Source of the DNA: Selaginella moellendorffii | Taxonomy: Eukaryota; Plantae; Lycopodiophyta | DNA length: 64,000 nucleotides | Direction: 5' to 3' | Assembly: GCF_000143415.4 (NCBI RefSeq) | Contig: NW_003314424.1 | Span: 99,194-163,193 of the forward strand | Shown here: one piece after another, positions 11,548 to 61,052 of the stretch | Layout: each line of letters starts with the position of its first letter | Position numbering within the stretch: the stretch's first letter is position 1 | Notes under the pieces: model-generated | Seen by the model: the letters and a program-made list of their open reading frames with translations, nothing else | Database searches by the model: none | Told to the model about the DNA's origin: nothing | Made by a program: the position numbers and the translations under genes

Positions 11548-11551
11548 TTAA

Positions 11552-11573
11552 GCTCTATTTCGTTAAAGTGGGA
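11552..11573 (+). repeat. Left terminal inverted repeat
   Basis: GCTCTATTTCGTTAAAGTGGGA, exact reverse complement of 23879-23900. Confidence 0.95.
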
Positions 11574-11991
11574 ATTGTCATTATCCCACTTGTAAAATAA
11601 GGTTTCCAAACCTTTATATAGTATATAAATATAACAAAATTCAACTGCATTGAGGCACATGCCATTTTATTTTAAACAAGGAAATGTCTACTCAATCACT
11701 TCTCCTCCCCCTGCCACTGCTTCACCTCTCTCTTCTCCTTGTCATCGTCGTCCAATTTCTTTCCATCCTTTTAATATTAGCTCAGTTGCTCCAAGTCTAG
11801 GTGGAGCCCAAGTCCCCATTCAATCTTTACTTTCCCCTTATTAATAAAACAACTTTGTAGACTTCCAATAACATGCTGTAACACTTCTAGTATAATGCAA
11901 ATCCTCTCAAAGAATTGTCTTTTAATATTAATACAATGGCATGGAACCCCATGCCATAATAAGTTACATTTTTAAATAAATACATGCCATC

Positions 11992-14900
11992 TCAGACTGT
12001 TATTTTTTGCCTCCAACGCCTATACAATAATCTTGGAATTTCATCACTCTCCACACTATCAGGATTTAAACCCAATAGTAATGCCATCTCTTCTCTAATA
12101 CGTCCACGCTCATGTTCAGTGGTCGAAGAACCCATCCGGTTGAGCAGATTATGGAGATGCGGATAGTGCTTGGCTAGACAATATACATGCCATAAATGAT
12201 GACTGGTGTCTGTCCGATCAAATGGCTTCTGATATACCGTTCCATCTGCCATTTGGTTGATTTCTGCAGCCACCTCCTGGACTGGCCGGTTCTCTATCAC
12301 CATCGCTCCAAGCCGTTTTGCAAGGTCCCCCAGAACATACGGTTTCTTCTCCCTAGTTTCCATACTGCAAGAGATGGGGTGCACTGCATATGTGTGCGTG
12401 TTCGCTGCAGTTTTAATCGGTGAGTCATCGATGATGAGGATTTCACTTGAGCTAGCAGTCCGGTTCATCACTACAGCCTCTGGCTTGACGAAGATGGGCT
12501 TGCTACCCCTCACATGGACCATAGTCAAGCAATCCTCCTGCGTTAGGAGAAAGTCAAATGGTAATATTACTCGCGTCTGATCGTGCATCATCTGAAGCAA
12601 CGTTAATGCATTGTGGCGCATCATGGATGTCCAAACTCCCAATTGCAAATTGAACCCAGCCCTCTGTTTTAAGTGTCGCATGGTCATTATTAGATCCCGC
12701 AGTTTCTCTCGTGTGATTAATGTGAATCTGTCTCTTTTGACCAACTTGCGACCGCAGGCTTTGGAGGGTGCACTGACATTCGAGGACGAGCCACGCTCAT
12801 GGGAGAAAAGGACACCGTTCAGATCAAAAACGATACAGTACCTTCGCCGTGACTCTGAAATGAAATGCGTCAGCATAAAAAATGGTACAAGTCAATTTTA
12901 CCATCTACAATATTAGCGAATGGTGCTCCCGATGGTCGTTGAGAGGGTTTTGGTCGAGGAAACGTGAAGGGCGGAAATACTCTCCTCTGCAATGTGGGGT
13001 CAATCGCATCCGATGGCGTGTGGGCATATGCCATTTCAGCTGTAGACTCTGGTACAACTGGCTCAACAGTGGCATGGGGTGGTTCCGATGGCGTGTGATC
13101 ACACGCCATTTCAGCTGGTGCCTCCGTTGGCAAAGTGGACATGACCGAACAGGCAGCAGGGGCGGTGTAGGGAGGTTCCAACGGCGCGTAGTCAGACGAT
13201 TGGGCACATGTTGAGTCCGTTGGAAATGAGGATACGACCGGCTCGGCAGCTGGGGCGGCCTCATGTGGGTCCAATGGCGCCTGGTCACTGTCAGTTGGAT
13301 ACGTGGACAAGATTGACTCAGTGGTATGGGCAGCATCAAGTGGAGCGTGGTCAGCTTGCTTGGCGTTGATATGGATAGTAGCCTCCACCAACTCTGATGA
13401 CTCTTGCAGCCAAGTAGAGTCCACTAGCGGATCCATATGCATGTCCAAATATCTCCCTTCGATTGAGATGGTATCCTCCCGTGCTACTAAAAACAAACTC
13501 ATTAGCACATTGAATTGACTATACTGTATTTACCATCAACTGCTATTGAGGAACTAGGACCGATATCACTTGGGCGCACTGCTGATTCTGAAGGATTGGA
13601 CATACGTTTCGACCCTTGCTTGGCACTATCCTTCCTCGACACTAAAGGCTAGAGTTTGTAAATTCAACTGAATAATCTCTACTTACCATTTGCTCTGCGA
13701 CCTACATGGACAATGTTAGAAATGGTAAAAGGTTAGGAATGGATGTACTATTATTTACCTGATGGTTTGTCTTGTATGACCTTCCTCCGCTGCTCTTTGG
13801 CCACCTCAGGCTGGCCATCGTCGTCATCATCGTCGTCGTCGTTATTGTGATCGTCACCATTGTGAGGACCATCCAAGTCCTCTTCGTCCTCCTCTTCTTT
13901 GTCCTCCTCTTCGTCCTTCTGCTCTTCCTGCTCATTATCTTTCTCTGGCTCCTCATCCCCCTCCTGCATTTCTTCCATAGGCTGCTCAGGCTGGATGGCT
14001 TGTTCTTCCAGGACCATCTTGGGAAAATCATCTGGCCGAGTCTCCATCTCAAAATACAAGACATCCATAGCCTATTTTAGTGCGTGACCTAGGACCGTAT
14101 CCTCACCCGACTGTCTTAACATGGTTTCTGCACGTTCTTGCACCCTTCGAAGACGACGAGATGAGAAAAACGTGGCCCTGACTTGAAAAGCTTCCCTCAT
14201 CCATTGTACCTCTCCATTGAGATTGGGGAAGGGGAGTCCGCCATAGGAATCTGAGTCATGAGGTGGTGACTGCCTGCTTTCACTCAGCCCTTGATCTGCA
14301 ATGAATGGCATGAGCACACATGCCATAACCGCGAGGCATTACCTATCATCTTTTCGTTGCCCTTCTTCCTTTTCGAATCAAACGCCTCTGATCTCGACGA
14401 CTGTCCAACATGCTTTCGCTTTTTATGACCACTGTCAGTTTGAGCTTGGCTGGTGCTTGCCTGTTTTGCCTTTGAAGAAGTTTCTCCTGTAAGGAATGGC
14501 ATGAGACCACACGCCATTGCAAATATAATTTGTACCTCCTTTTTTCCTATTGCTTGTCTGTTTGTCCTTCTTCGATGCGCCACCAGTGCGCTTTTCAGTC
14601 CTCGTGTCTGAATATTCACAACGATCTATAATCAAAATGGCGTGAGGCCTCACGTGACCTTACCTTGTGCAGGTTGTGAGCTCGGCCCAACATGGGTATC
14701 TTCAATAGTAGCTATTAACGCCGTTTCAGCATCTGGGGGTGGCCACGCTCCTGCATACAGAGCTTGTGAGATAACATTTAAACTTAAAGTGTGTACTCAC
14801 CAGGTTCGCAGAGAAGATACTGTTTTTCTTTGGCAACTGTAATTATATGCTCCATTGAAGTCACCTCTTCAATGGAGTTTGTCACCGCAACACACGGGAC

Positions 14901-17357
14901 ACCCTTGAGTAGTGCGGCTCGAAAGAATAGTCCGCCGCAGTTGTACTGGACAATGCATTTGCCCTTGGAGTCGGAAGCAGGTGACCCACCCGCTATTGCG
15001 TTGAAGACCCAACTGAGCATTTCCCATGCTGCACCTGGAGCTTTCTTTGGATTCGAAAGCTCCATAGCCGTCTTCAGTTCCTCAGGCACGGGTAAATTGA
15101 CCTCCCTCAGATCAATTCGATTGGCCTTGTCGAACGAAGCGGGGAAGTCACTCCAGTTCCACTCTGCTGCAGGACCAATAACAAGGGCGAGTGTGAAGAT
15201 GCGGACATTCGTCGGTATCTTCTTCTTAGCCATTATCCCATGGATCTCCTGCATCTCCTTGCCTTTCAACCGAGCCTTCACCTCGTTCAAGGCCTTCCAG
15301 AACTTGTGATAGGATTCGGAGTCGTAGATCATATAGTGGACTGAAGATTCCACCTCCGCAAGTCCCACCATTAAGTCAATGATGGAGCTGATTTCGTCTG
15401 CATGAGTGATCTCCTCATTTGTGAAGTCCATCACACAAAAGATGTTCTTGACCTGCTCATCTCCGCGGGAAACGATGCTCCTCCACCTTTGATCCTCATC
15501 CGAATTCAAGTATACCCGGTAAGGTTCTCGATAGGCCTCTGCTGCGGGGTCGAGCTATTTCTGAAGCCGGCGGTCGACATCAATCTTAATGAAATTTGGA
15601 TACTAATCCAACTTCTTAGCTTTACATTTCATGGCATCCCGCAGCAGATCGATGAACTTGGGGGCCCCCTTCACGTACTCGTCGATGTCTTCATTTGACA
15701 ACTCCAGCGCTTCCATCATCTCTTGCGTGGTGTCGATGCTCACCCTCTCCACGGCCACTTGCTCGAAGATCCAATCCTTCAATAGCGCACGAGCTCTCAG
15801 AGTCGTGCACAAGTCCTCGTATGTCACAATATGGCCGGGAGTCATTTTGGTCTTGTTGAAGACTACCTCACCACGTAGAAGAGCATTAGCCACTGTCAAA
15901 AGGTCGTCGTCGTCTAGAGACCGCGAGAAACGCAAGGCGTTGAGCTTCAAATCATTGGGCTTCCGGCCATCCTCCACACCCATTGAGTTTGGCAACTCCC
16001 CGTCATGGTACCTCCTCAGCACATCTACCCATTTGTCAAAAACAACTTTTGTCGCGAGTAGAATGTTATGGATGCTGAGTGTGTCATTGACCCCCAGTGT
16101 TTTCGAGAGAAGACTCGAGAATTCCTGCAATGGAAATGGCGTGAGGCCACATGCTATGCCACATGCAATGAGGCTTACCTGCCAGGCGCTAGTTGCTAGT
16201 GCACGTCCTTGTCCTGGTTTTTGTGGCTTCTTCAGTTGAACCCAGAGCTTCCGTGTTCGTGCCAATGTCTCGTGCAGACCCAATTTGTAGCACGTTTCTT
16301 GCTTGACATTCTGCGCGTGGGAGATGTATATGATAGATCGGAGGGGCGAGTTGCCTTTTATCAGGCGGACAACTCTTGTCTTGAAGACTTTCTTCACCTC
16401 CTCGCCCACCATAATATCCACAACTATCTCTTGCATCGCCAAGCTAGAATGCTGCCCGGAGACGGCATAGAACCGGATGTTCTGATCGTCCAACACCTTC
16501 CTATTGATCAAGTCTGGAAACCTCGTCTCACCCTTCATTGTTCGGTAGTAGGGGATCACGTCTGCGATGTCGGGTGTTACTGGACTTGCCAGCATCTTCT
16601 GCTTCAGTTTCTCCACCCACTCATCAAATACTAGCCTGTGGTTGTATTTGCTTTGGATGTCGATACGGCTCACGTCGATTGTATATACTTTGTTGGAATA
16701 GTAACAAGTATTATTATTTGCGACGATTTTTGCTGCCTCTTCTTGCTCTTTCTGCTCTTTGCGGCTCTTCTTTTTGGTGGGTGTAGTGTTCGAACCCGAG
16801 GCAATGGCATCACCGAGTAACTTCTTTTTTGGAGCAGGAAAGTCGGATGTCGGCTTGAGCTTGACCACCCTTTTCTGCTTCGGGGTAGTTTCTAGATCGA
16901 CCCCCTTCCCCTTCACTTCGCGAACTGGAGGCACTCTCAACGGCTCAATGTTGGAATATAGTTTTTGAACATCGCCGTAGGTGAGGTCCGTGGATTCCAT
17001 GTGATCTTCATAGACCCGCAGCGTCTTTGAAATTGTGGGCCTCCTGGACAACCTCTCCCTAGCTCCCTCTAGGAATTCCTCATAGCCGCTGCCCCCCTCC
17101 GGGAAGCCGCTAGGATGTGCAAGGTGGATCTTGAAGGCAGACGCTGTCTCTACCACAAGTGCCAGTCCATATTCTTGCATGGAACTGCATGGAGTGTCTG
17201 TCACTTGGATGAGGATCCCCATGCATTCTTTTCTCCCACCATCTGTGTTGTACAGCCTCAGATCCTCGCCTTCCATCCCGAAAGTCCAACTGGTGAGCTC
17301 CTCCCCCTTCTCTGCATCCACATTGACAGTGGCTGGAAGAAGAACGCAATTCCTCGC
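11992..17357 (-). pseudogene. Multi-exon transposon cargo gene: ParB/Srx-like + degenerate N6/N4-MTase-like + acidic linker + FCP1/NIF HAD phosphatase (at least 1,637 codons, 3 in-frame TAG stops, 5' exon(s) unresolved)
   Basis: Exons 17357-16179, 16124-14801, 14750-14664, 14607-14536, 14486-14343, 14295-13759, 13701-13687, 13641-13534, 13486-12902, 12854-11992 joined by nine 45-57 nt GT-AG introns keep one frame (4914 nt). Motifs FYAVSGQHS, CIVQYNCGGLFFRAALLKGVPCVAV, IVFDLNGVL, VWTS, IIDDSPIK. Confidence 0.75.
13010..13370 (-). repeat. About five degenerate ~75-nt coding tandem repeats in a cargo-gene exon
   Basis: Peptide units DHAPLDA, DQAPLDP, DYAPLEP, DHTPSEP, AHTPSDA; two units contain the 22-bp palindrome. 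Confidence 0.7.
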
Positions 17358-17599
17358 CTGTTCAGAAATGCACAACAATTAGAGCTGACAGATGAAAAGC
17401 TAGTAGCTGGAAATAACGTGAGGCCACACGCCATTCACCACTGCATCAGATGTCTTGAGGCTGCATCCTAAGATGGCGTGAGGCTACACGCCATCTGTAA
17501 CCGGACTGCACTCGAGAGCCCAATCGGTGCATGCCAATGTTGCTACTGAATGGCATGTGGCCTCATGCCATTTTCTACTTGGCCTAAAAGACTTACCAT

Positions 17600-20144
17600 T
17601 TGAAGCCGAATGGAGGCGTGACAACCGGACTCGCTGGCGAATGTGCACTGTGTGTGCAGCGGATCGTAGCAGCAAGGCTACTCTGCCACTTACAGTTGGA
17701 GAGTGGCACTGAAATCTCCCGGATGCCAAGTGGGCTGCGTGTGGGTGGCGGAGTGGGCGGCGGAGTTGGCGGCGAAGTTACAAACTGGGTGTGTCTTGAA
17801 GTGGATGCCGATGCACACGAGCGCGATGCGAGCGCGAGTGTGATGCAAGCGCGAGTGGACGCCAATGCACACGAGAAACCTGTAGAGAAGTGGGAGCGCG
17901 AGTGGGAGCGCGATGCGAGCACGAGTACGAAGCAAAATGCAAAACCTAACCTCACACGCGCGAAATGTCACGATGGTTGGTAATCCCGCCACGTCATCAT
18001 TCCTCGGACTTGGGCGCCACCATTAATTTCTGGATCGGCGCGCGCATGCGTGAAATCCAAAAGAAATCCGCAACGTCATCATTCCTCGGACTGCATGCAT
18101 GCGAAATCCAAAAGAAAGATCATGATTGGGATATCATTTAATACCCTCGCTATATTTATACCATGCATGATTGAATATTCCAAAGCATCTTGTATTTCCA
18201 AAAATGCCAAATGTTCAGCTAAATAAATTGTCAGAGGATTTGATGTGACGTTCAAGCGTGTGGGCTCATGCAATTTTGATCCCAAAAAATGCACCAAAAA
18301 ATGCTCGGTGTCATCTGGCGTTATCTCTTGAATGGCGTGGGGCCGCATGCCATTTTCAGGAGCACATAGGAGTATATTCCTAGAATATTCTGACACGCGC
18401 GAGATTGTTTTGAGTTTCCTGGAGATCCAACTGTTAGATCGCAACTAGATTTTACAGAATGGTATACAATGTCCTTCTTGATGACCCTGCAAAGAAGCAT
18501 CTCGATCGGACACCACATGAGACCACACGAGCCTTACAATGTTTCAGGGGCATTTGCCATAGATCCAACCGTTATTTTGCTCCAAGATTCTACAGTTTGG
18601 TGTGCATTAACCTTTCCATCGACACTGCAAAGGGACATCACAATCAGATGCGGGATCACAAGAAACCAACTTCACTAACTCTGGTTTCACCAAGATCTAC
18701 GTAAGGAGTTATGAAATGAAAGGACCCTCTCTATTGAAATGTGTTTATGGTCTTAGGGGCATTGTGACATATCAAAGGATTTTGCATTAAGTTCTGTATT
18801 TGCATGTTTATCAAGCTACTGAATTGCTAAACCCTAAACCCTAAACCCTAACCCTAAACATGTGGCAAATGCTGCGTGAAGAAAGATGCCCTTTCTGGGC
18901 AAATGCTGTAAGAGGCAGATTCCGAGCAGATGTATCTCAGGCTAGCGAAGGGGACAAACGAAAGCTAGCTATAAACATGACGGGATGCAAATAGATTACT
19001 AGGCTGGTCCTGCGAAAATCAAAAACCATAATTGAAAACATTGAAAATGCAAAAAGAAAGGTTTATAATATTTTTGAATTTTAAGCAACCAAATGAATGT
19101 AAGTAGGGCATGTGTTTGTAAGTTTAAAAATGCCTCAACCACTTAAATTCCCAAGTAAATAAAGTTGTTTCTATTTTTGGTACAGGTAAACTTTATAGCG
19201 TGTGGGCTCATGCAATTTTGAACCCAAAAATGCACCAAAAAATGCTCGACTAGCATTATTCTTTGAATGGCGTGTGGCCTTATATTGCCATAAATGGACG
19301 TACACACACAGCATAATTATTCCTTTACACGGCAAATAATCTTGGCGCGGATCGCTGACATGGCATGGCAAAGTTCGAATCACTGACATGGCACAGTTGG
19401 ATCGAGGCAAGGACATGATGTGACAAAGTTCAACCTCCGACAGCAAAGTCTAGAAGCTACTCAGTTTGAAATTTGTCAGAGGACTCATAAGATCTGGTTT
19501 GTCAGAGGATTTGATGTGACGTTCAAGCGTGTGTTATTTTTGAATTCTCGAACTCATTCCTAGGTCTATCATTTTTGTGCGCCGTGTTCTTGGTTCCGCT
19601 GAGCGTAGTGAGCGCTGCTTGTGTAAGCGGCGTTGTGAGCTGTGGTTTATGCGTCTACAAGCGGTTGTGGCATTGCGAGCGCCATTGCGAGCGGCAATTT
19701 ATGCGAGTGGCAGTTTGTGCGAGTGGTGCTACGAGCAGTTGCGGTGTTGCGAGCGGCGCTATGAGTAGTTGCGGTGTTGCGAGCGGCACTGTCTTTGGTG
19801 TGGCTACCGCTTCCTCTTGATATTCGGCACTTGTGCTTCCTAGTATGTTCACCATGGAATGGTTTAGGACCACATTTAGAAATGGCATGAGGCCACATGC
19901 CATCTTGGGCCCTTGCAATTTCATGGCTAGCGTATTGTCATGTATGTTTTTACTTGCCTGCAGCTGTGTGTATATCAAGATGGCATGAGGCCTCATGCCA
20001 ATTTTGTGAATGCGAAATTTCACGTGGGTGTCAATAGCATGTTTGAATAATGGCATGTGGCCTCATGCTATTTGGTATGTTATGATTTAGGCCATTCTCC
20101 AATCATTTTTTGTATGGTCTTAACTTCTTTTCTGCACTTTCAGA
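17600..20144. promoter_or_regulatory. Divergent promoter/leader region between cargo gene and transposase, with CpG-rich tracts and direct repeats
   Basis: CG-rich low-complexity tracts 17740-18100 and 19580-19800; direct repeats at 17991/18074 and 18231-18307 vs 19197-19248 and 19502-19533; 7 palindrome copies. Confidence 0.55.
18827..18859 (+). repeat. Plant telomere-type (CCCTAAA)n / telobox array
   Basis: CTAAACCCTAAACCCTAAACCCTAACCCTAAAC. Confidence 0.85.
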
Positions 20145-23100
20145 ATGGCCTTCAGGGTTGGGGAAAAGGTTTACATTTTGAATGGTGGGAAGAGAGTTGC
20201 AAAAGGGACCTTTGTGTCTATGGATCGGAACTTTGTTATACACTGTCAAAGGCTTGGGGAAGGCAATGCTGCTGTATCAGTAGAGACTGTCTTCGATGGG
20301 AATGTGGTCGCTATTGAACGAGGAGAGATGGTCGTCGGGGTAAATGTTGTTGTTGCCTTGAAAAATCTGCAGAAGAAAACAGATGTTGGGGACAGCGCAA
20401 GTGCGACGCATGTTCCCTCTGTGGATCTTAAGAACCGTGCTACATGGATTCAGGCAAAGGTGTTTCTAAACAACCCCGAGGGGGAGGTGGTAGCTGAGGG
20501 CTTAGCCACAGTTGTCGATCCAAGAGATGCGGTTGCTAATCAAGAATTGGGCTGGGATGATATTGGAGTTGCGATTTTAGAGGTTGTTGACACAGAAGAA
20601 AACAGTCTGACTATTGGAAGCATTGTGCAGTGGAAATTGAGGCATTTAGTGTTTGAGAATGTGAAGGATTCACAATCAAACACCACTACAACTGATGACA
20701 GAACATCTCTTCATGGGAAAAGAAAGTACACCTTCCTACAGCGCAGCCAAAGGGATCTGAGCAACGAACCGAAAAGGCAAAAAATGGCGATGGAGGTTCG
20801 AATGGTCTCGACAGTTGCTTGTTGCAAGAGGAGGTGCTGTCAACATGCTGATTGGGGTGCTATTGAAGAGGAGAGAGCAAGATACAAGACATTGTCCTGG
20901 AAGGCAGCTCGCAATTTTGTGTATGAGGCATTATGGTCATCTGTTGATGCTTCAGAACATCAGGTGGGGGGCATGGTCTTCCAGAGGGGTTTGGTCTGCA
21001 TGAAGGCATGGAGAATCATTTATGGAGTCCCTCGAAGCACATTCTACAGAATCAAAACTGAGTTCGAGGAACAAAGGGTTCAACAGGCAGTCCATGGGAA
21101 CGACGGTACGCACAAAACCAGGGGTCATGTTGTATATGGAGAGGCAATCTTCAAGAGGTTTGTCGAGACATGTAGCGAGCAGCAACCACATAAAACCCGC
21201 CTCTTGGAAGATGGAACACGAGACACCCAACGAGTTCTCCCTTCCATGTATACCAAGGGGGCCATATTGGAAGATATGAATCGGGAACTCTAGAGTAATG
21301 GCTACAGGAAGCTGAGCCAATCTAGATTTAGTAGATTGTGGAGCAACAGGTTTAGGGATGTGAGTATAGGAAAGTACTCCAGCTTTTCAAAGTGTGACGA
21401 GTGCACTGCTATCAAAATGGCTTTGTCGAAGAATTCTTGCAGCGCTCAAGAGCGAGAGACGTTGGTTAGAAGGCGGCTCGACCACAACATCGAGAAGAGA
21501 AGCTGTAGGACTGCATATTATCATAACAAGATTCTCTCCATGGAGAGACCTGACTCTTACCTCTGCATCATCCACGACAAAATGGACCAGAAAAAGACGT
21601 GCTTATCTCGACTCAATCCTGCCCCCAAGGCAATCTCTTCATCCATGCAGCTGCTTGTGTCTCTGTTTGGCATAATCGCTCATGGGCATGGTGCCCAGAA
21701 CTATGGGAACTTCTTTGTACCTCTATGGGGTGGCGGGGGTGCAAACATGATGATTGCGTCCCTAGCAAAACACTTAAGGTCTCTGCAAAGTGCGCAGACT
21801 GAGCTGAACGGCCAACCCTTGCATAAGGCCCTTGTCGATTGAACCCCATACAGGGTTCAGCTGGAGGAGGAGCAAAGGCTTGCAGTATCGCATGGGGCCC
21901 CATGCCATCCCAGTGAATATGTTGGCCGTCAGATTGTAGGGTTATCACGTGAGGCCTCATGCCATTCCGACGAGGCTGGTCGCCCGGTGAATGCACAGCC
22001 TCATCCAAACGAAGCAGAATCTCAAGGAAGTTCTTGCGGCCGATGTGGCCTTCCACCCCATCTTCTGCTCCAAACAGACAATGCTGGCAGTGAGAACAAA
22101 AACATGTACGTCTTCGCGTACTTGGCGATGCTTGTTGCCAAAGGCATATTTGAAACGGTTACACTTGGCTTTCTCATGGTTGGGCACACTCATGAAGACA
22201 TCGATGCCATGTTCAGTCACCTGGCAGAGTCCCTCCGGCGATCCAATGTCCTCACCCTCCCACAACTCTACGATGAATTCCAAAATTGCATCAAAGGCAC
22301 TGTTGAAGCTGCACTTGTGACAGAGGTTCCAGACTTTAAGGGGTTTGTAAGAGGCTACATCAGGGACGGATCCGAAACGCTGATTGGCCACTCCAAGCCT
22401 CTTCAGTTTCATTTCAGCATGCGTGACGGTGCTCCAGTGATGAGGTACAAGATGAGAGAATGGGACACAGTGTGGCTGCCAGTGGATGGCATTGAACTCT
22501 TCAAGAGAGATCCCATAACTGGGGAACCTATGATTCCTCAAGGTTCCCCACGGCCGATGCACCCGGATGGACTCAAAGACCAGGAAAGTATAGTGGCCGG
22601 GATTAGACAGCATATTGCCTTCTGGAAGAGGGGGTTGGTGTTTGGTGGAGAATCCTATTTTAAGAGGTGCAAGCCTTTGCTCGAATACTGGGAGAAGATT
22701 ATATCTGCTATCCAAAATGGGCCGGTTGTATATGAAGAATTGGAAGAGTCCTTTTGGCCAGAACCCAGAGCACCAGATAGTAGCGGAACAATGTCCTCTG
22801 GAAATGCAGTGACAGATAACGATGTTGAGGATCACTATTGTGGGCCGAGGAACAAGAAGCCAGATTCCGCATTCAATCCAGTACAGGTCTGCAAAGGAAT
22901 GGTCGTGCTTGTCAGACCCAGTAATAAAAAACAAATGATATGGGTGGGGCGCTGCATCACTGATGCAGAGGAGGATGCGGAAACTAACTCCTTCAATGTA
23001 ACTATGGAGTGGTTCAAGCCAAGTTCCAGATATACGAAGGATTGCCTAGAAAAGAGATGGGTGCTGAATCCAAGGGATCCCAGCATGAGCATATCGGTGG

Positions 23101-23286
23101 ATAATGTTGTGCATGGTTGGATGCGGAAGTAGAGTGCCACCATCACCTTGCCAGACCATGCAAGAGATGCAGCAAGAGCATTCATAACCCGGGTTCAAGG
23201 TGAGATTCATTAATATTCCTTTACTAAGTTTCTAATGTATTTTATTTCAAGGTGAACAATCCGAATCTGAATCAGAGGAGGCGTGA
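20145..23286 (+). pseudogene. Sola-like DDD transposase, about 1030 codons, 3 in-frame stops, probable intron 23200-23251
   Basis: ORFs at 20145, 21336 and 21987 share one frame, with stops at 21291, 21840 and 23130. Motifs CCKRRCC, CDEC, IHDKMDQ, LQTDNAGSENKN, FLMVGHTHEDIDAMFS. Confidence 0.85.
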
Positions 23287-23878
23287 TGGCATGTGGCCCT
23301 TTGCACTAGTATATCTTAATACCGGTCTGAGAAATAGAATGGCATGTGCCCTCAAGCCTTTTACTAAATCACCTTTGAAAGAAATGCAAGCCTCTATGTC
23401 GTAAAAAAAAGGTACTAGAGAAATTCCTTAATAATATGAATGTTATTTAGTTTCATGAAAATACACTAAGGGTCAAATGAGTTAAATGACTTCTCCAGAC
23501 TAGCAATGCCTCTTGCTACACCTTCACAATTAGATTCGTTAGAAAAAGATAACATTGAATAATATCTAAATGTTCTCACCATTAAGTTATATGTCTGGCT
23601 AATAGGAATGACGTTCATCTTGGAAAGCTCACCACACGCTCAATGAACAAACAAATAGTGTGTGCGCGCATGCCATTGCTCTTCTTTAGCTTCAGATTCG
23701 GCTTGTTCACCTTGACAATGAGATTTATTATACAACCAGATGGACTCAGTCTGGACACAAAGTCACCGCGCTAGTCACCATGCCCCAGATATGTCTAGCC
23801 CCTGGACAAAAAACATATAATTTCACGTCATTTTCAAATACTTGAAAATTTGTACCTAGTCCCATTTTACTGAATAAA

Positions 23879-23900
23879 TCCCACTTTAACGAAATAGAGC
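23879..23900 (-). repeat. Right terminal inverted repeat
   Basis: TCCCACTTTAACGAAATAGAGC followed by TTAA. Confidence 0.95.
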
Positions 23901-23904
23901 TTAA

Positions 23905-25010
23905 TTGTAATGTCCTCCGATAACAAGGATGCTCTCTAGGCTGTAAACTTCTCCTGAACTTCCTGCTTGGTGAAGGCACGTGTGAACTCTTCCGAGATCG
24001 GCTCTCTGGGTGAGTCAGGGAACGAATGCAGAGAGGCTTCAACCAGGTGGTTTCCCTTGACCTGCACATATCCATCGATCTCAGAAACCTCATGTCCATG
24101 GCTGCACAAAACAAACAGAAAACTGTCTTCAAAACACGAAACTAGAAACACTCGTGAAGATATGTTGGAGGTCTTGTTTGCTTCCCTAAGCTGGCAGTGC
24201 CTTTGGTGTGGCCATCCATACATACCTGTAGCAGAGTCTTCACATCAATTCCCAATCTTAGTGTATGCACATCCAGGATCGACGTGGTGAACGCTAGAAT
24301 GTCTGAATGCCAATCCTTAAAGGAGGTGACGTATTCATCCATATCCAGGTCTGATTCGTTATTAGGCTCAACGTCATCGTACTCCAGGTTCAGAAAACGG
24401 CTTCCTCATCCAGGTCCTGCTCCTGTGCCTCCTCATCCTCCTCCGACTCCCCCTCTAAGCCCATCTGTAACTGGAACTCTTCCCACTCAGGTTCCTGCTC
24501 ATTGTGCTTACACTCTGCCCTGTACCGCATGAAAAGGGCGAACGAACACAATAGCCTAGAGAAAATGCTTGATCCTGCCGTCTCTTGTCTTGGAAAACCA
24601 AGGTGGCGAGCTGAAATGCACACATCTTTGAGAACGCAGACTCCAACTACACGCACGACCCTCTCCCTTACTGGAAACATCTTTCGATTAAACCTGGAAC
24701 ACCGAGACACTTAGACACAAAACGAGGTGGTCAAGAATACCTACCGATCATAGGGAGGCATGGCATCTGGGATCTGTTCGATCAGCCCGTACCTCTTCTT
24801 AAATTGCTCCATAGTGATCTTGCTGTGACCATCTTCGTTCACTCTCATGTGTTCCAGAATCCAGAGAACTCCAAGATTGCTTGCAACCAAAACGTGCATC
24901 GTCTGCATCCCTCTGGTTCTTATGAGCTGCCTCCGGTGGCTCTGCCCTCCACCTGGTGCTGATGACGGTGCTCGTCGACCCATCGCCCCATTCCTAGGCG
25001 CCGCAGCCAT
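23905..25010 (-). pseudogene. 5' exons of the unknown gene interrupted by the DNA transposon
   Basis: Exon-like ORFs 24741-25010, 24390-24530 (acidic), 24142-24342 and 23936-24100 with short GT-AG gaps, stops and a frameshift. Confidence 0.5.
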
Positions 25011-59760: not shown

Positions 59761-60059
59761 ATGCATTGCCGCTGCGATATTCCGAGCGATTGACCGCGCG
59801 TCTAGTGATTTCTGGGAGCTGCCGATGGCTTTGGAGGCTGTCTTTAGCAAATGCTTTTCTGGAGCTGGGATTTCTCATGGATGTGGAAATTTCTTTCTAG
59901 GGGGATTTGCAGCAGCTGAGCTCGAGCTCCAGGTCGTGTTTCACGGGAAGGAAATTGGCAGTAACAGGTGCGTGAGACACGTTTTCGACAGCGACAGTGC
60001 TCATTCGTGCATGTTTGCGGGCGCTCAATGTGGTACCTCCTCCAGTACGCAGGAGTACC

Positions 60060-60540
60060 CAAGAAATGCTGGTTCCTCTAAGATACGCTGCTCGTCAAAT
60101 GATCCTCCCTCAGCTTGGCCAGAGCAATGGTGGATGGAGCTAGGAAAAAATCCTGGGATGGACCAAAGCCCATTTCACTTCTTGGATCCACGGGCTCCAT
60201 CGGCACACAGGTTAGAATCCCTGTTTTCCTTCGTTTCCTATGCAAGCGATGAGGATGCTAACGTGGTGTTGTGCCACACACTTGACATCATCTCGGAAAA
60301 CCCTGACAGATTCGAAGTTGTTGGCCTGGCTTCTGGCTCAAACGTTACACTTGTTGCTGATCAGGTAAACTACGAATTGGTCAGCCGTCGTATCTGTTTA
60401 TACGAGCTTACACTGCCAATCAACAGGTCAGGAGATTCAAACCAAGCATGGTTGGGATTCGAGACCGAATTAAAAGAAGCCATTGCTGATCTTGACGAAA
60501 ATCCAGAGATTGTCGTTGGGGACGAAGGAATTGTACAGGT
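60060..60540 (+). pseudogene. DXR: DXR N-terminal part, frameshifted and 3'-truncated
   Basis: [25 protein letters not shown] (alternative frame), TLDIISENPDRFEVVGLASGSNVTLVADQ, PEIVVGDEGIVQ. Confidence 0.88.
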
Positions 60541-61052
60541 ACTTCAATTTGCTCAGTTGTTTTTTCTCATATTTTTTTTCTCTTGTGTTTGCTTTTTTTT
60601 GCTCTTCAGATAGCGTGTCATCCAGAGGCAGTAGAAGTTGTGGCATATTGGCGGAGGCAGCCGCGCGCATACCGGACAACAAAGATCAGTTGAATGCGGT
60701 GCTGGAGGTGGCGCAGCGAGTTTTCAAGCAAGCGTACGTTGTGGAGGGGCCTCGAGGGGAAATAGTTACATGCCTGTTGCAAGCACGTCGTTGAAGACTA
60801 AGTTTACTCAGCCGGCAGTCCATATGTTCTACCTCTTGCAAAGAAACACGGAATCAACATCCTACCTGCGGGAGATTTTCCTTGTTGGCTAGAGCAATAT
60901 CCTTTCCAGCTGCTATTGCTGCTACTGTAGGCTGCAAAGAATATTATTGTACATGTCTAAGTGCTTGAAGAACAAACTTTCGTGTACGCTTACCTTGAGG
61001 CTAGCACAACCAACCATTCCTAGGCTTGAACGTGTCCGCGGTGAAGACCCAG

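What the first reader, a model, noticed from the sequence alone, without database searches (positions are those of the whole stretch)
11552..23900. 12.35-kb TTAA-targeting Sola-like transposon carrying a ParB/MTase-like/phosphatase gene and its own palindrome array: candidate new system
Seen: TTAA duplication, perfect 22-bp TIRs, a DDD-type transposase (DN..ENKN, GHTHEDID) on +, a divergent gene of at least 1,637 codons on -, and more than 20 copies of one palindrome confined between the TIRs. Known: Sola3 and piggyBac target TTAA, and these motifs are Sola-like rather than piggyBac-like. Arabidopsis VANDAL transposons encode VANC anti-silencing proteins that bind short motifs enriched in their own non-coding DNA. 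Inference: an autonomous-type element encoding a chromatin or transcription effector plus its cognate sites, possibly an independently evolved anti-silencing or self-marking module. I do not know of a described element with this architecture.
Basis: partly seen in the sequence, partly recalled or inferred. Interest (0 to 1): 0.93.

Follow-up and report, generated by a model that had tools for sequence, protein, structure and literature searches.

The report
Sola1 transposon with private palindromes
This is a real but mutated copy of a large Sola1-type "jumping gene" in a plant genome. Besides its transposase it carries a big second gene with a bacterial ParB-like domain and 22 copies of its own palindrome. 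That looks like a built-in protein-plus-docking-site module, a design first noted in algal transposons in 2025.

Summary
A 12,349-bp element (11552-23900) has perfect 22-bp inverted ends and a TTAA duplication, with a transposase on + and a roughly 1,600-codon gene on -. It holds 22 copies of a 24-bp palindrome (AATGGCRTG-N-GGCC-N-CAYGCCATT); none lies in the other 52 kb.

The transposase is Sola1: it hits Pfam DUF7869 and shares about 50% of a 58-residue core with the curated Ectocarpus Sola1-1 transposase. The second gene has a confirmed ParB/Srx-fold domain, a weakly supported degenerate methylase-like part and a NIF phosphatase domain.

This copy is dead. It has one in-frame TAG in the transposase and two in the second gene, and its changes against the family majority are mostly C>T at CG/CHG.

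Twenty of the 22 palindromes lie in non-coding slots, including tiny introns. A relative in another plant assembly has the same two-gene layout with 34 copies of a different palindrome.

The likeliest reading is that an element-encoded protein docks on these sites. Whether that protein is the ParB-like one or the transposase is open.

The idea is not new. ParB-type accessory genes with inverted repeats were reported in brown and red algal transposons in 2025, and this scan has already found the same family on other DNA of this genome. I rate it a new variant of a known kind.

The parts
11548..11551 (.). Left target-site duplication, TTAA
   Evidence: Read directly
11552..11573 (+). Left terminal inverted repeat, 22 bp
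   Evidence: Exact match, only two copies in the window, 0 expected
23879..23900 (-). Right terminal inverted repeat, 22 bp, perfect complement of the left one
23901..23904 (.). Right target-site duplication, TTAA
20145..23132 (+). Sola1 transposase gene. Three ORF pieces share one frame. It is broken by an in-frame TAG at 21291-21293. A gap at 21834-21998 is probably an intron.
21291..21293 (+). In-frame TAG in the transposase. It aligns to Q in the uninterrupted ORF of relative L005.
22050..22460 (+). Transposase catalytic core (Pfam DUF7869) with DNAGSENKN and GHTHEDID
   Evidence: E 1.6e-40. By eye, 29 of 58 residues are identical to Sola1-1_Ec32_tpase as printed.
21834..21998 (+). Candidate 165-nt intron of the transposase gene, holding two palindromes (21886, 21943)
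   Evidence: Frame and GT..AG reading. No RNA evidence.
11992..17599 (-). Accessory (cargo) gene of about 1,600 codons, multi-exon and divergent from the transposase
16290..16691 (-). ParB/Srx-fold domain of the accessory protein. Its motif is AVSGQHS where ParB has GERR.
   Evidence: AlphaFold model with pLDDT 74.8. The top Foldseek hits are all ParB/Noc/KorB/Srx. VIA-align gives Z 11.3, rmsd 2.0 A over 95 residues to ParB.
15555..15605 (-). Two in-frame TAG codons (15603-15605 and 15555-15557) split what is one long exon in the family majority. At both, nearly all other copies read CAG.
   Evidence: table 3 (places 15605 and 15557, A read as G), with frame arithmetic
14801..15541 (-). Methylase-like region. 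Its motif-I-like stretch is IVQYNCGG. There is no (D/N/S)PP(Y/F) motif.
   Evidence: No Pfam or PDB sequence hit. The fold model was too poor to use. Atlas features point to PF01555 at 0.86-0.88. The homologous ORF in L008 gets PF01555 at E 0.0011, below the cut-off.
11992..12854 (-). C-terminal NIF/FCP1-like phosphatase domain. Its active-site motif reads DLNGV in this copy.
   Evidence: Pfam NIF at E 3.3e-6, 27.3 bits against a cut-off of 21.8. The relative L008 has NIF at E 7e-11.
16125..16178 (-). 54-nt GT..AG intron holding one palindrome
   Evidence: Removing it gives ...AWQ|EFSS..., which matches P0001 (...EWQASEFES...) and the spliced P0015 and P0009. L008 has an intron at the same place with two of its own palindromes.
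14296..14342 (-). 47-nt GT..AG intron holding one palindrome. It is needed to keep the reading frame.
14504..14555 (-). Candidate 52-nt intron holding one palindrome
   Evidence: Reading through it also stays open, so this is uncertain.
14608..14663 (-). Candidate short intron holding one palindrome (site at 14636). Its exact borders are uncertain.
17358..17596 (-). First intron or 5' leader of the accessory gene, holding three palindromes
17600..20144 (.). Central region between the two divergent genes. It holds six palindromes (18252, 18331, 19194, 19881, 19979, 20049), internal direct repeats and a short TTTAGGG-type run (about 18826-18860).
11643..23677 (.). The 22 palindrome sites start at 11643, 11935, 13012, 13087, 14304, 14495, 14636, 16135, 17412, 17472, 17549, 18252, 18331, 19194, 19881, 19979, 20049, 21886, 21943, 23285, 23338 and 23654.

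Best explanation
What it is. This is a recently inserted but mutationally dead copy of a high-copy Sola1 cut-and-paste transposon. It has two divergently transcribed genes around a roughly 2.5-kb control region. One is the transposase. The other is a large accessory gene: an unknown N-terminal part, a ParB/Srx-fold domain, a helical domain, a degenerate N6/N4-methylase-like region, acidic and proline-rich linkers, and a NIF/FCP1-type phosphatase domain.

The palindromes. The element's non-coding DNA carries 22 copies of a family-specific 24-bp palindrome: in the subterminal regions, the central region, the 5' leader and several tiny introns. No point of the element lies more than about 0.9 kb from a site.

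Proposed mechanism (inferred). The palindromes are docking sites for a dimer of an element-encoded protein. The ParB-like accessory protein is the more likely binder (about 45%), and the transposase is second (about 25%). The model is how ParB, Noc and KorB use dispersed palindromes. Docking would mark the whole element as 'self' and bring the attached domains (pseudo-methylase, CTD-phosphatase-like) to act on its transcription or silencing.

Shown here: the element's anatomy, Sola1 identity, the ParB/Srx fold, the NIF domain, confinement of the palindromes to the element and to non-coding slots, conservation of the layout with a different palindrome in a relative, and the decay of this copy.

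Inferred: binding, which protein binds, and the effect on the element.
For: - Anatomy.
- Sola1 identity: Pfam DUF7869 at E 1.6e-40. The core DN..ENKN...MVGHTH..ID..FS matches the curated Sola1-1_Ec32 transposase at 29 of 58 positions. Sola1 has a 4-bp duplication in that curation.
- ParB/Srx fold.
- NIF domain.
- Palindromes: 22 of 22 inside the element and 8 strict hits against 0.02 expected. Only 2 of 22 fall in the 62% of the element that codes, binomial P about 3e-7.
- Relative L008 has the transposase on - and ParB...methylase-like...NIF on +, with 34 copies of TCGGGACGCGTCCCGA. All lie between its 36-nt inverted ends, and two lie in the intron homologous to 16125-16178.
- Relative L001 has the cargo gene plus 13 copies of ACCTCACGC-N4-GCGTGAGGT.
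- The palindromes are mutually private.
- All three loci with the cargo gene have a private palindrome. The transposase-only locus L007 has none.
- Published precedent for the idea: PMC12477816 and bioRxiv 10.1101/2025.02.11.637652.
Against: - Only the N-terminal ParB/Srx domain is matched. The helix-turn-helix that reads parS in true ParB proteins was not found (one search aligns only ParB residues of about 37-140). The GERR nucleotide-binding arginines are replaced by QHS.
- Two relatives show palindromes beside a Sola1 transposase without a visible cargo gene. L005 has 23 copies upstream, although the contig ends 4.4 kb upstream. L006 has 3 copies and no cargo gene within 10 kb.
- There is no RNA, binding or methylation evidence.
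- This copy is methylation-decayed, so any protective function did not save it.
- The methylase-like and phosphatase active-site motifs look inactive.
Confidence: 0.55

Rival explanations
1. The transposase, not the ParB-like protein, binds the palindromes. They would be internal and subterminal transposase-binding or autoregulatory sites, and the accessory gene would be unrelated cargo.
For: - L005 has 23 palindromes directly upstream of a Sola1 transposase with no cargo gene in view, and L006 has 3.
- The window has sites within 91-383 bp of the left end and 222-590 bp of the right end.
- Contigs of other copies join at palindromes: rc(21967-21996) to 14636, and 20019-20048 to 17549. This could reflect aberrant cleavage or recombination there.
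Against: - The densest clusters are central and intronic, not terminal.
- The palindrome has no similarity to the terminal repeats.
- L007 has the transposase but no palindromes.
- The L005 contig ends before a cargo gene could appear.
- All three cargo-bearing loci have palindromes.
Confidence: 0.25
2. The palindromes act as RNA hairpins in introns and leaders. They could aid splicing of tiny introns or feed small-RNA pathways, and would not be protein docking sites on DNA.
For: Up to ten of the 22 sites lie in probable introns or the leader of the two genes. Each can form a 9-11-bp stem.
Against: - Eleven or more sites lie in subterminal and intergenic DNA.
- The stems are too short for Dicer substrates.
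- The two central variable positions are often not complementary.
- Seven or so introns of the same gene have no palindrome.
- The L001 intron at the homologous place lacks one.
Confidence: 0.07
3. The palindromes are host transcription-factor sites, or small selfish or recombination-prone repeats that spread inside the element, with no cognate element-encoded partner.
For: Rearrangement junctions lie exactly at palindromes. In L005 and L008 many copies lie in 110-530-bp tandem repeats, which can multiply a motif without selection.
Against: - Each family has a different palindrome and none occurs outside its element. That is hard to square with a host factor.
- No target duplications flank the palindromes.
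- In the window most sites are dispersed singletons in unrelated flanks.
Confidence: 0.1

Closest known systems
Sola1-1_Ec32 of Ectocarpus (Genome Biol 2025, PMC12477816)
   Same: It belongs to the same transposase superfamily, with about 50% identity over the catalytic core. It has a 4-bp target duplication and is a giant element. It has a gene on the strand opposite the transposase that encodes a ParB-like domain plus a DNA-methylase domain. The authors propose that this protein binds and modifies its own transposon.
   Different: - Ectocarpus: 21.5 kb, 282-bp imperfect inverted ends, a 1,104-aa protein with a predicted active N4/N6 methylase. No phosphatase and no palindrome array are reported; the paper does not contain the word palindrome.
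- Here: 12.3 kb, 22-bp ends, TTAA, a degenerate methylase-like part, an added NIF phosphatase domain, and 22 dispersed palindromes in a land-plant genome.
Plavaka accessory gene PAG3 of Bostrychia and other red algae (bioRxiv 10.1101/2025.02.11.637652; Curr Biol 2025)
   Same: It is a transposon-encoded protein with an N-terminal ParB-like domain, found only by remote homology. It is accompanied by arrays of inverted repeats in the same element. Self-binding and self-modification are proposed.
   Different: It belongs to a different transposon superfamily (EnSpm/Plavaka). Its effector is a 2OG oxygenase. Its repeats are tandem arrays next to the gene, not sites spread over the whole element and its introns.
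VANDAL21 / VANC of Arabidopsis
   Same: It is a DNA transposon encoding an accessory protein that recognises short motifs accumulated in its own non-coding DNA. The motifs differ between related families. This rests on general knowledge and is cited as the analogue in the Bostrychia paper.
   Different: It is a Mutator-type element with an unrelated protein, and its motifs are non-palindromic and lie in tandem repeats. Its function is shown experimentally, whereas nothing is shown here.
Bacterial ParB/parS, Noc/NBS and KorB/OB of plasmid RK2
   Same: They share the N-terminal domain fold (Z 9-11). They are dimeric proteins that use 16-bp-class palindromes dispersed over a replicon. KorB uses them to regulate promoters across the plasmid (general knowledge).
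   Different: The GERR CTP-binding motif is absent (SGQHS instead) and no helix-turn-helix was detected. The protein is eukaryotic, intron-containing and fused to other domains.
piggyBac
   Same: Both duplicate a TTAA target.
   Different: There is no DDE_Tnp_1_7 domain, the transposase core is Sola1 (DUF7869), and the ends do not begin with CCC.

Membership tests
Sola1 DNA transposons | Transposase catalytic core homologous to curated Sola1 transposases | tested here: met
   Pfam DUF7869 at E 1.6e-40. The stretch from DN..ENKN to GHTH..ID..FS is identical at 29 of 58 positions, by eye, to Sola1-1_Ec32_tpase printed from the paper's supplement. That entry was itself classified by best blastp to the Repbase entry Sola1-1_PPa.
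Sola1 DNA transposons | 4-bp target-site duplication and terminal inverted repeats | tested here: met
   TTAA on both sides and perfect 22-bp ends. The curated Ectocarpus table lists a TSD of 4 for Sola-1.
Sola1 DNA transposons | DDD catalytic triad | tested here: inconclusive
   Candidate aspartates lie in IIHDKMDQ, TDNAGSENKN and GHTHEDID. They are assigned by motif only, with no structural or alignment proof.
piggyBac | DDE_Tnp_1_7 transposase domain | tested here: not met
   No such Pfam hit in any transposase piece. Only the TTAA target is shared.
ParB/Srx superfamily | ParB N-terminal domain fold | tested here: met
   Model pLDDT 74.8. Foldseek's top 48 hits are all ParB/Noc/KorB/PadC/Srx/SbnI, best E 2e-4. 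VIA-align gives Z 11.3, rmsd 2.0 A over 95 residues to M. xanthus ParB. No sequence-level hit in Pfam, NCBIfam or PDB.
Canonical ParB (CTP-dependent DNA clamp) | GERRxR nucleotide-binding motif and an adjacent helix-turn-helix that reads parS | tested here: not met
   The motif is (A/I)SGQHS, with G and H invariant in 10 relatives. Structural matches cover only about ParB residues 37-140, which excludes the DNA-binding domain. The downstream helical domain gives only chance-level DndB leads.
N6/N4 DNA methyltransferases (PF01555) | Family profile match, catalytic motif (D/N/S)PP(Y/F) and AdoMet motif FxGxG | tested here: inconclusive
   - Window: no Pfam or PDB hit, and the fold model was unusable at pLDDT 39.5.
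- Leads: atlas features at 0.86-0.88, and the L008 homologue at PF01555 E 0.0011, below the cut-off, which aligns to the window's IVQYNCGG stretch.
- No PPY-type motif in the window, P0001, P0009 or L008.
NIF / FCP1-SCP phosphatases (PF03031) | Family profile match above the curated cut-off | tested here: met
   27.3 bits against a cut-off of 21.8, E 3.3e-6. The relative L008 scores E 7e-11.
NIF / FCP1-SCP phosphatases (PF03031) | Catalytic DxDx(T/V) motif | tested here: not met
   This copy reads FDLNGVL, with N in place of the second D. The place lies outside the stretch compared with other copies, so I cannot tell whether this is private decay.
Transposon-encoded ParB-type accessory protein with cognate inverted repeats (algal Sola1 / Plavaka PAG3 type) | ParB-like accessory gene inside the element, plus multiple inverted-repeat units inside the same element | tested here: met
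   for the window; for L008. Binding itself is not testable with these tools.

The most novel reading that the evidence does not exclude
Non-seed land plants would host a family of Sola1 transposons with a ParB-derived protein that loads on private palindromes. These are planted about every 0.1-1.8 kb, and even inside purpose-kept tiny introns. The protein would coat the whole element and use a tethered CTD-phosphatase-like domain (with a pseudo-methylase scaffold) to steer Pol II transcription or evade RNA-directed DNA methylation. That would be an anti-silencing or self-marking system evolved independently of VANDAL/VANC. Protein-site specificity would diversify between families, partly by rearranging a conserved half-site: GCGTGAGG is inverted in this family and everted in L001.
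Probability: 0.25. Interest if true: 0.85.

Novelty: new variant of a known kind. Interest (0 to 1): 0.5.

Why it matters
If the palindromes are docking sites for an element-encoded protein, this family is a clean natural experiment in how a transposon recognises itself. It offers about 20-34 sites per element, a different site in each family, and a conserved protein architecture reaching from brown algae to land plants.

It would also extend the only experimentally known self-binding transposon system (VANDAL/VANC) to a different superfamily, protein fold and plant lineage.

The hypothesis is directly testable: in-vitro binding with swapped palindromes, and methylation or expression of copies with intact versus broken accessory genes.

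As it stands, it is an annotated example of a design already proposed for algae in 2025, and the scan has seen it repeatedly in this genome.

Tried and rejected
- Word-indexed protein search with the 591-aa ParB-containing ORF found nothing.
- An exhaustive HMMER search of 1.84 billion proteins gave only 15 weak hits, best E 3e-9.
- Pfam, NCBIfam and PDB sequence searches of the ParB and methylase-like parts found no family.
- The fold prediction of the methylase-like region failed at pLDDT 39.5, so no fold search was made with it.
- Read laying gave no spliced RNA. The one run guessed to be RNA (X20) holds unspliced pieces across intron 14296-14342, so splicing is unproven.
- My first gene model treated 15542-15625 as an intron. 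I rejected it because the two TAGs there are CAG in almost all other copies and both ORFs share one frame.
- I first read the palindrome-bearing gap in the L008 transposase as an intron homologous to 21834-21998. I rejected this because L008 breaks earlier, lacks the DN..ENKN/GHTH block, and the gap is a 110-bp tandem repeat.
- No TSD could be read for L008; its flanks are CGGG and ATAC.
- Palindromes as mini-transposons: no flanking duplications.
- piggyBac and Sola3 readings: there is no piggyBac domain, and the core matches Sola1.
- One literature search and two look-ups for the original Sola paper found nothing usable.
Full report
**1. Observation**

The 22-bp sequence GCTCTATTTCGTTAAAGTGGGA occurs exactly twice in the 64-kb window, at 11552-11573 on + and 23879-23900 on -, with none expected by chance. 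Both ends abut TTAA, at 11548-11551 and 23901-23904. The element is 12,349 bp.

The + strand carries three ORF pieces in one frame: 20145-21293, 21336-21842 and 21987-23132. They contain the motifs DNAGSENKN and GHTHEDID. The - strand carries a chain of ORFs from about 17599 to 11992.

The palindrome is real and confined:
- The strict pattern with up to 2 mismatches gives 8 hits against 0.02 expected.
- A looser search gives 19 hits.
- A symmetrised weight matrix gives 22 sites of at least 10 bits. All lie between 11643 and 23654, and none lies in the remaining 51.6 kb.

The matrix was trained on in-element sites. The unbiased figures are therefore the 8-of-8 result and the absence of any outside hit at a low threshold.

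**2. Transposase**

The last ORF piece hits Pfam DUF7869 at E 1.6e-40. Atlas neighbours and 24 database relatives all carry DUF7869.

The link to a named superfamily comes from the Ectocarpus transposon paper. Its supplement prints the curated Sola1-1_Ec32 transposase, which was classified by best blastp to the Repbase entry Sola1-1_PPa and has a 4-bp duplication. The printed core...VDNTVAENKN...MVGHTHIQIDQIFS..., matches the window's ...TDNAGSENKN...MVGHTHEDIDAMFS... at 29 of 58 positions by eye. So the element is Sola1. It is neither Sola3 nor piggyBac, since there is no DDE_Tnp_1_7 hit.

The gene is broken. The first two pieces are separated only by an in-frame TAG at 21291-21293. In relative L005 the same stretch is an uninterrupted ORF with Q at that position.

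Between the second and third pieces, a 165-nt GT..AG segment (21834-21998) keeps the frame and holds two palindromes. It is probably an intron, but I have no RNA evidence.

**3. Accessory gene**

Part of that path is an artefact.

The 591-aa and 241-aa ORFs are in the same frame and are separated by two TAG codons, at 15603-15605 and 15555-15557. At both places about 99% of the laid contig depth from other copies reads G where the window has A, which is CAG on the coding strand (table 3). The family majority therefore has one long exon here, and this copy has two nonsense mutations.

Domains:
- **ParB/Srx domain.** Residues about 230-363 of the 591-aa ORF (window 16290-16691) fold as a ParB/Srx N-terminal domain.
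  - The model, built from an alignment of 10 relatives, has pLDDT 74.8.
  - Foldseek's top 48 hits are all ParB, Noc, KorB, PadC, sulfiredoxin or SbnI.
  - VIA-align gives Z 11.3, rmsd 2.0 A over 95 residues.
  - No sequence method sees the domain.
  - The nucleotide-binding GERR motif is replaced by SGQHS.
  - Only the N-terminal domain is matched. The helix-turn-helix that reads parS was not detected, so DNA binding by this protein is an inference.
- **Methylase-like region (14801-15541).** This label is weak.
  - There are no profile hits and the fold model is unusable.
  - Atlas features point to PF01555 clusters at 0.86-0.88.
  - The homologous ORF in relative L008 gets PF01555 at E 0.0011, below the cut-off. 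It aligns to the window's IVQYNCGG stretch.
  - None of the four homologues has a (D/N/S)PP(Y/F) motif. If this is a methylase fold, it is probably inactive.
- **NIF phosphatase domain.** The last exon has a NIF/FCP1-type domain above Pfam's cut-off. It is conserved in L008 at E 7e-11. In this copy the active-site motif reads DLNGV.

**4. State and age of the copy**

The family is very abundant in DNA runs of the source organism: 27,681 and 69,549 contigs were laid from two runs. A 5.2-kb sibling contig differs at 58 letters and 25 gap positions over 4.8 kb.

Window-versus-majority differences are dominated by T-for-C and A-for-G. Of the 31 transitions of that kind (window T for majority C, or A for G) among the places listed, 20 are at CG and 8 at CHG. 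That is the signature of deamination of methylated cytosine in plants.

The palindrome's own CG positions show the same decay, GCGTG to GCATG. At one site the family majority can be read directly, and there it has CACGCC where this copy has CATGCC (14321).

So this is a young insertion with intact ends and duplication. It has been methylated and has lost both reading frames.

**5. Where the palindromes sit**

| Location | Sites |
|---|---|
| Left subterminal region | 11643, 11935 |
| Proline-rich linker exon | 13012, 13087 |
| Short GT..AG segments of the accessory gene | 14304, 14495, 14636, 16135 |
| First intron or leader of the accessory gene | 17412, 17472, 17549 |
| Region between the two genes | 18252, 18331, 19194, 19881, 19979, 20049 |
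| Transposase gap | 21886, 21943 |
| Right subterminal region | 23285, 23338, 23654 |

Only 2 of the 22 sites fall in the 62% of the element that codes (P about 3e-7). The largest gap between sites is 1.84 kb.

The intron at 16125-16178 is supported by homology. Removing it gives ...AWQ|EFSS.... This matches P0001 (...EWQASEFES...) and the spliced gene products P0015 and P0009.

At least seven other candidate introns have no palindrome. The palindromes therefore do not define the introns. Rather, introns are among the few places where the sites are tolerated.

**6. Relatives**

| Locus | Source | Transposase | Cargo gene | Palindrome |
|---|---|---|---|---|
| L008 | Assembly GCA_046195345.1; organism not given by the tools, earlier notes of this scan say a liverwort | Remnant on - | ParB...methylase-like...NIF on + | 34 copies of TCGGGACGCGTCCCGA, all between its 36-nt inverted ends (317-352 and 17091-17126), two of them in the intron homologous to 16125-16178 |
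| L001 | Same assembly | Not found | Present | 13 copies of ACCTCACGC-N4-GCGTGAGGT |
| L005 | Environmental contig | Sola1, 37% identical | Not in view; the contig ends 4.4 kb upstream | 23 copies of AGCTTGGTCYTARGACCAAGCT, all upstream of the gene |
| L006 | Environmental contig | Present | None within 10 kb | Three palindromes |
| L007 | Environmental contig | Present | None | None |

The L001 half-site GCGTGAGG is the same as the window's, but the two halves face outward instead of inward.

The palindromes are mutually private. A family-specific palindrome is thus a recurrent trait of this clade. It accompanies the cargo gene in all three cargo-bearing loci, but I cannot exclude that it goes with the transposase.

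**7. Mechanism**

The best-supported reading is a self-recognition module. A dimer of an element-encoded protein docks on the palindromes spread over the element's non-coding DNA.

I put about 45% on the ParB-like accessory protein as the binder. The reasons are the fold, the ParB/Noc/KorB precedent for dispersed palindromes, and co-occurrence in three of three loci. I put about 25% on the transposase, because of L005 and L006, the subterminal sites, and the rearrangement junctions at palindromes in other copies. The rest goes to RNA-level, host-factor or selfish-repeat readings.

What docking achieves is inferred only from the attached domains and from published analogues. Candidates are transcriptional control through a CTD-phosphatase-like domain, protection from silencing, or autoregulation at the bidirectional control region.

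**8. Comparison with what is known**

The Ectocarpus paper describes Sola1-1_Ec32. It is 21.5 kb with an opposite-strand 1,104-aa ParB-plus-N4/N6-methylase gene. The authors suggest such proteins bind and modify their own transposon, and they cite green and red algal cases.

The Bostrychia paper describes the Plavaka gene PAG3 (ParB-like plus 2OG oxygenase). [quoted passage not shown]

The concept and the Sola1/ParB pairing are therefore published. Relative to those reports, the following are new:
- a land-plant host;
- the NIF phosphatase fusion;
- an apparently dead methylase part;
- element-wide, intron-embedded sites instead of a tandem array;
- direct evidence that related families carry different palindromes.

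The same family was already noted and followed up on other pieces of this genome by this scan. Those notes reach the same classification. I re-derived it independently here.

**9. Verdict**

I rate it a new variant of a known kind, with moderate interest.

Noticed in passing
window 14636, 17549, 20019-20048, 21967-21996 (contigs of run X3): Contigs from another sample of the same organism join rc(21967-21996) directly to the palindrome at 14636. They also join 20019-20048 directly to the palindrome at 17549. So other copies of the family are rearranged, by inversion-type and duplication-type junctions, exactly at palindromes.
   Followed up: partly
window ~18826-18860; also between 17137 and 17224 in other copies: A short run of plant-type telomere repeats (TTTAGGG on the - strand) sits in the central region between the two genes. 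One contig of another copy has a telomere-like insert replacing 17138-17223 (table 5c).
   Followed up: no
window 18230-18310, 19195-19260, 19473-19563: The central region contains internal direct repeats (for example ...gcatgagcccacacgcttgaacgtcacatcaaatcctctgacaa...). Other copies join 18262 straight to 19534, so the length of this region varies among copies.
   Followed up: partly
L004 10001-11425 (assembly GCA_000143415.2, scaffold GL377575.1): The best database relative of the accessory protein (P0001, 451 aa) has the helical middle domain and the methylase-like part but no ParB domain. It sits among ordinary host genes (SCAR, ArfGAP, VQ) with no palindromes nearby. It may be a domesticated or stranded fragment. 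From memory, this accession is Selaginella moellendorffii.
   Followed up: partly
window palindromes versus L001 503-12971: The window's palindrome is GCGTGAGG followed by its complement. L001's is the complement first, then 4 bases, then GCGTGAGG. The two families share an 8-base half-site in opposite arrangement.
   Followed up: partly
L006 1-9000: An environmental contig with a Sola1-type (DUF7869) transposase also carries an IS110-type transposase and bacterial-looking genes (Metallophos, SBP56) within 10 kb. The origin of this contig is unclear.
   Followed up: no
window 20145-20700: The N-terminal 190 residues of the transposase contain two similar small beta-rich modules. One has a weak, sub-threshold resemblance to the TNP1/En-Spm family (Pfam Transposase_23, E 0.085).
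   Followed up: no
window 23936-24223 (-) and 59825-60613 (+): A 95-codon minus-strand ORF ends 32 bp from the right TTAA, so the element may sit just downstream of a gene or gene fragment. Farther away there is a fragment with a DXP reductoisomerase domain (E 3e-6).
   Followed up: partly
L008 4572-5024: In the relative, the transposase is interrupted by four tandem ~110-bp units, each carrying one palindrome. The DN..ENKN/GHTH catalytic block is missing, so that copy is also defective.
   Followed up: yes
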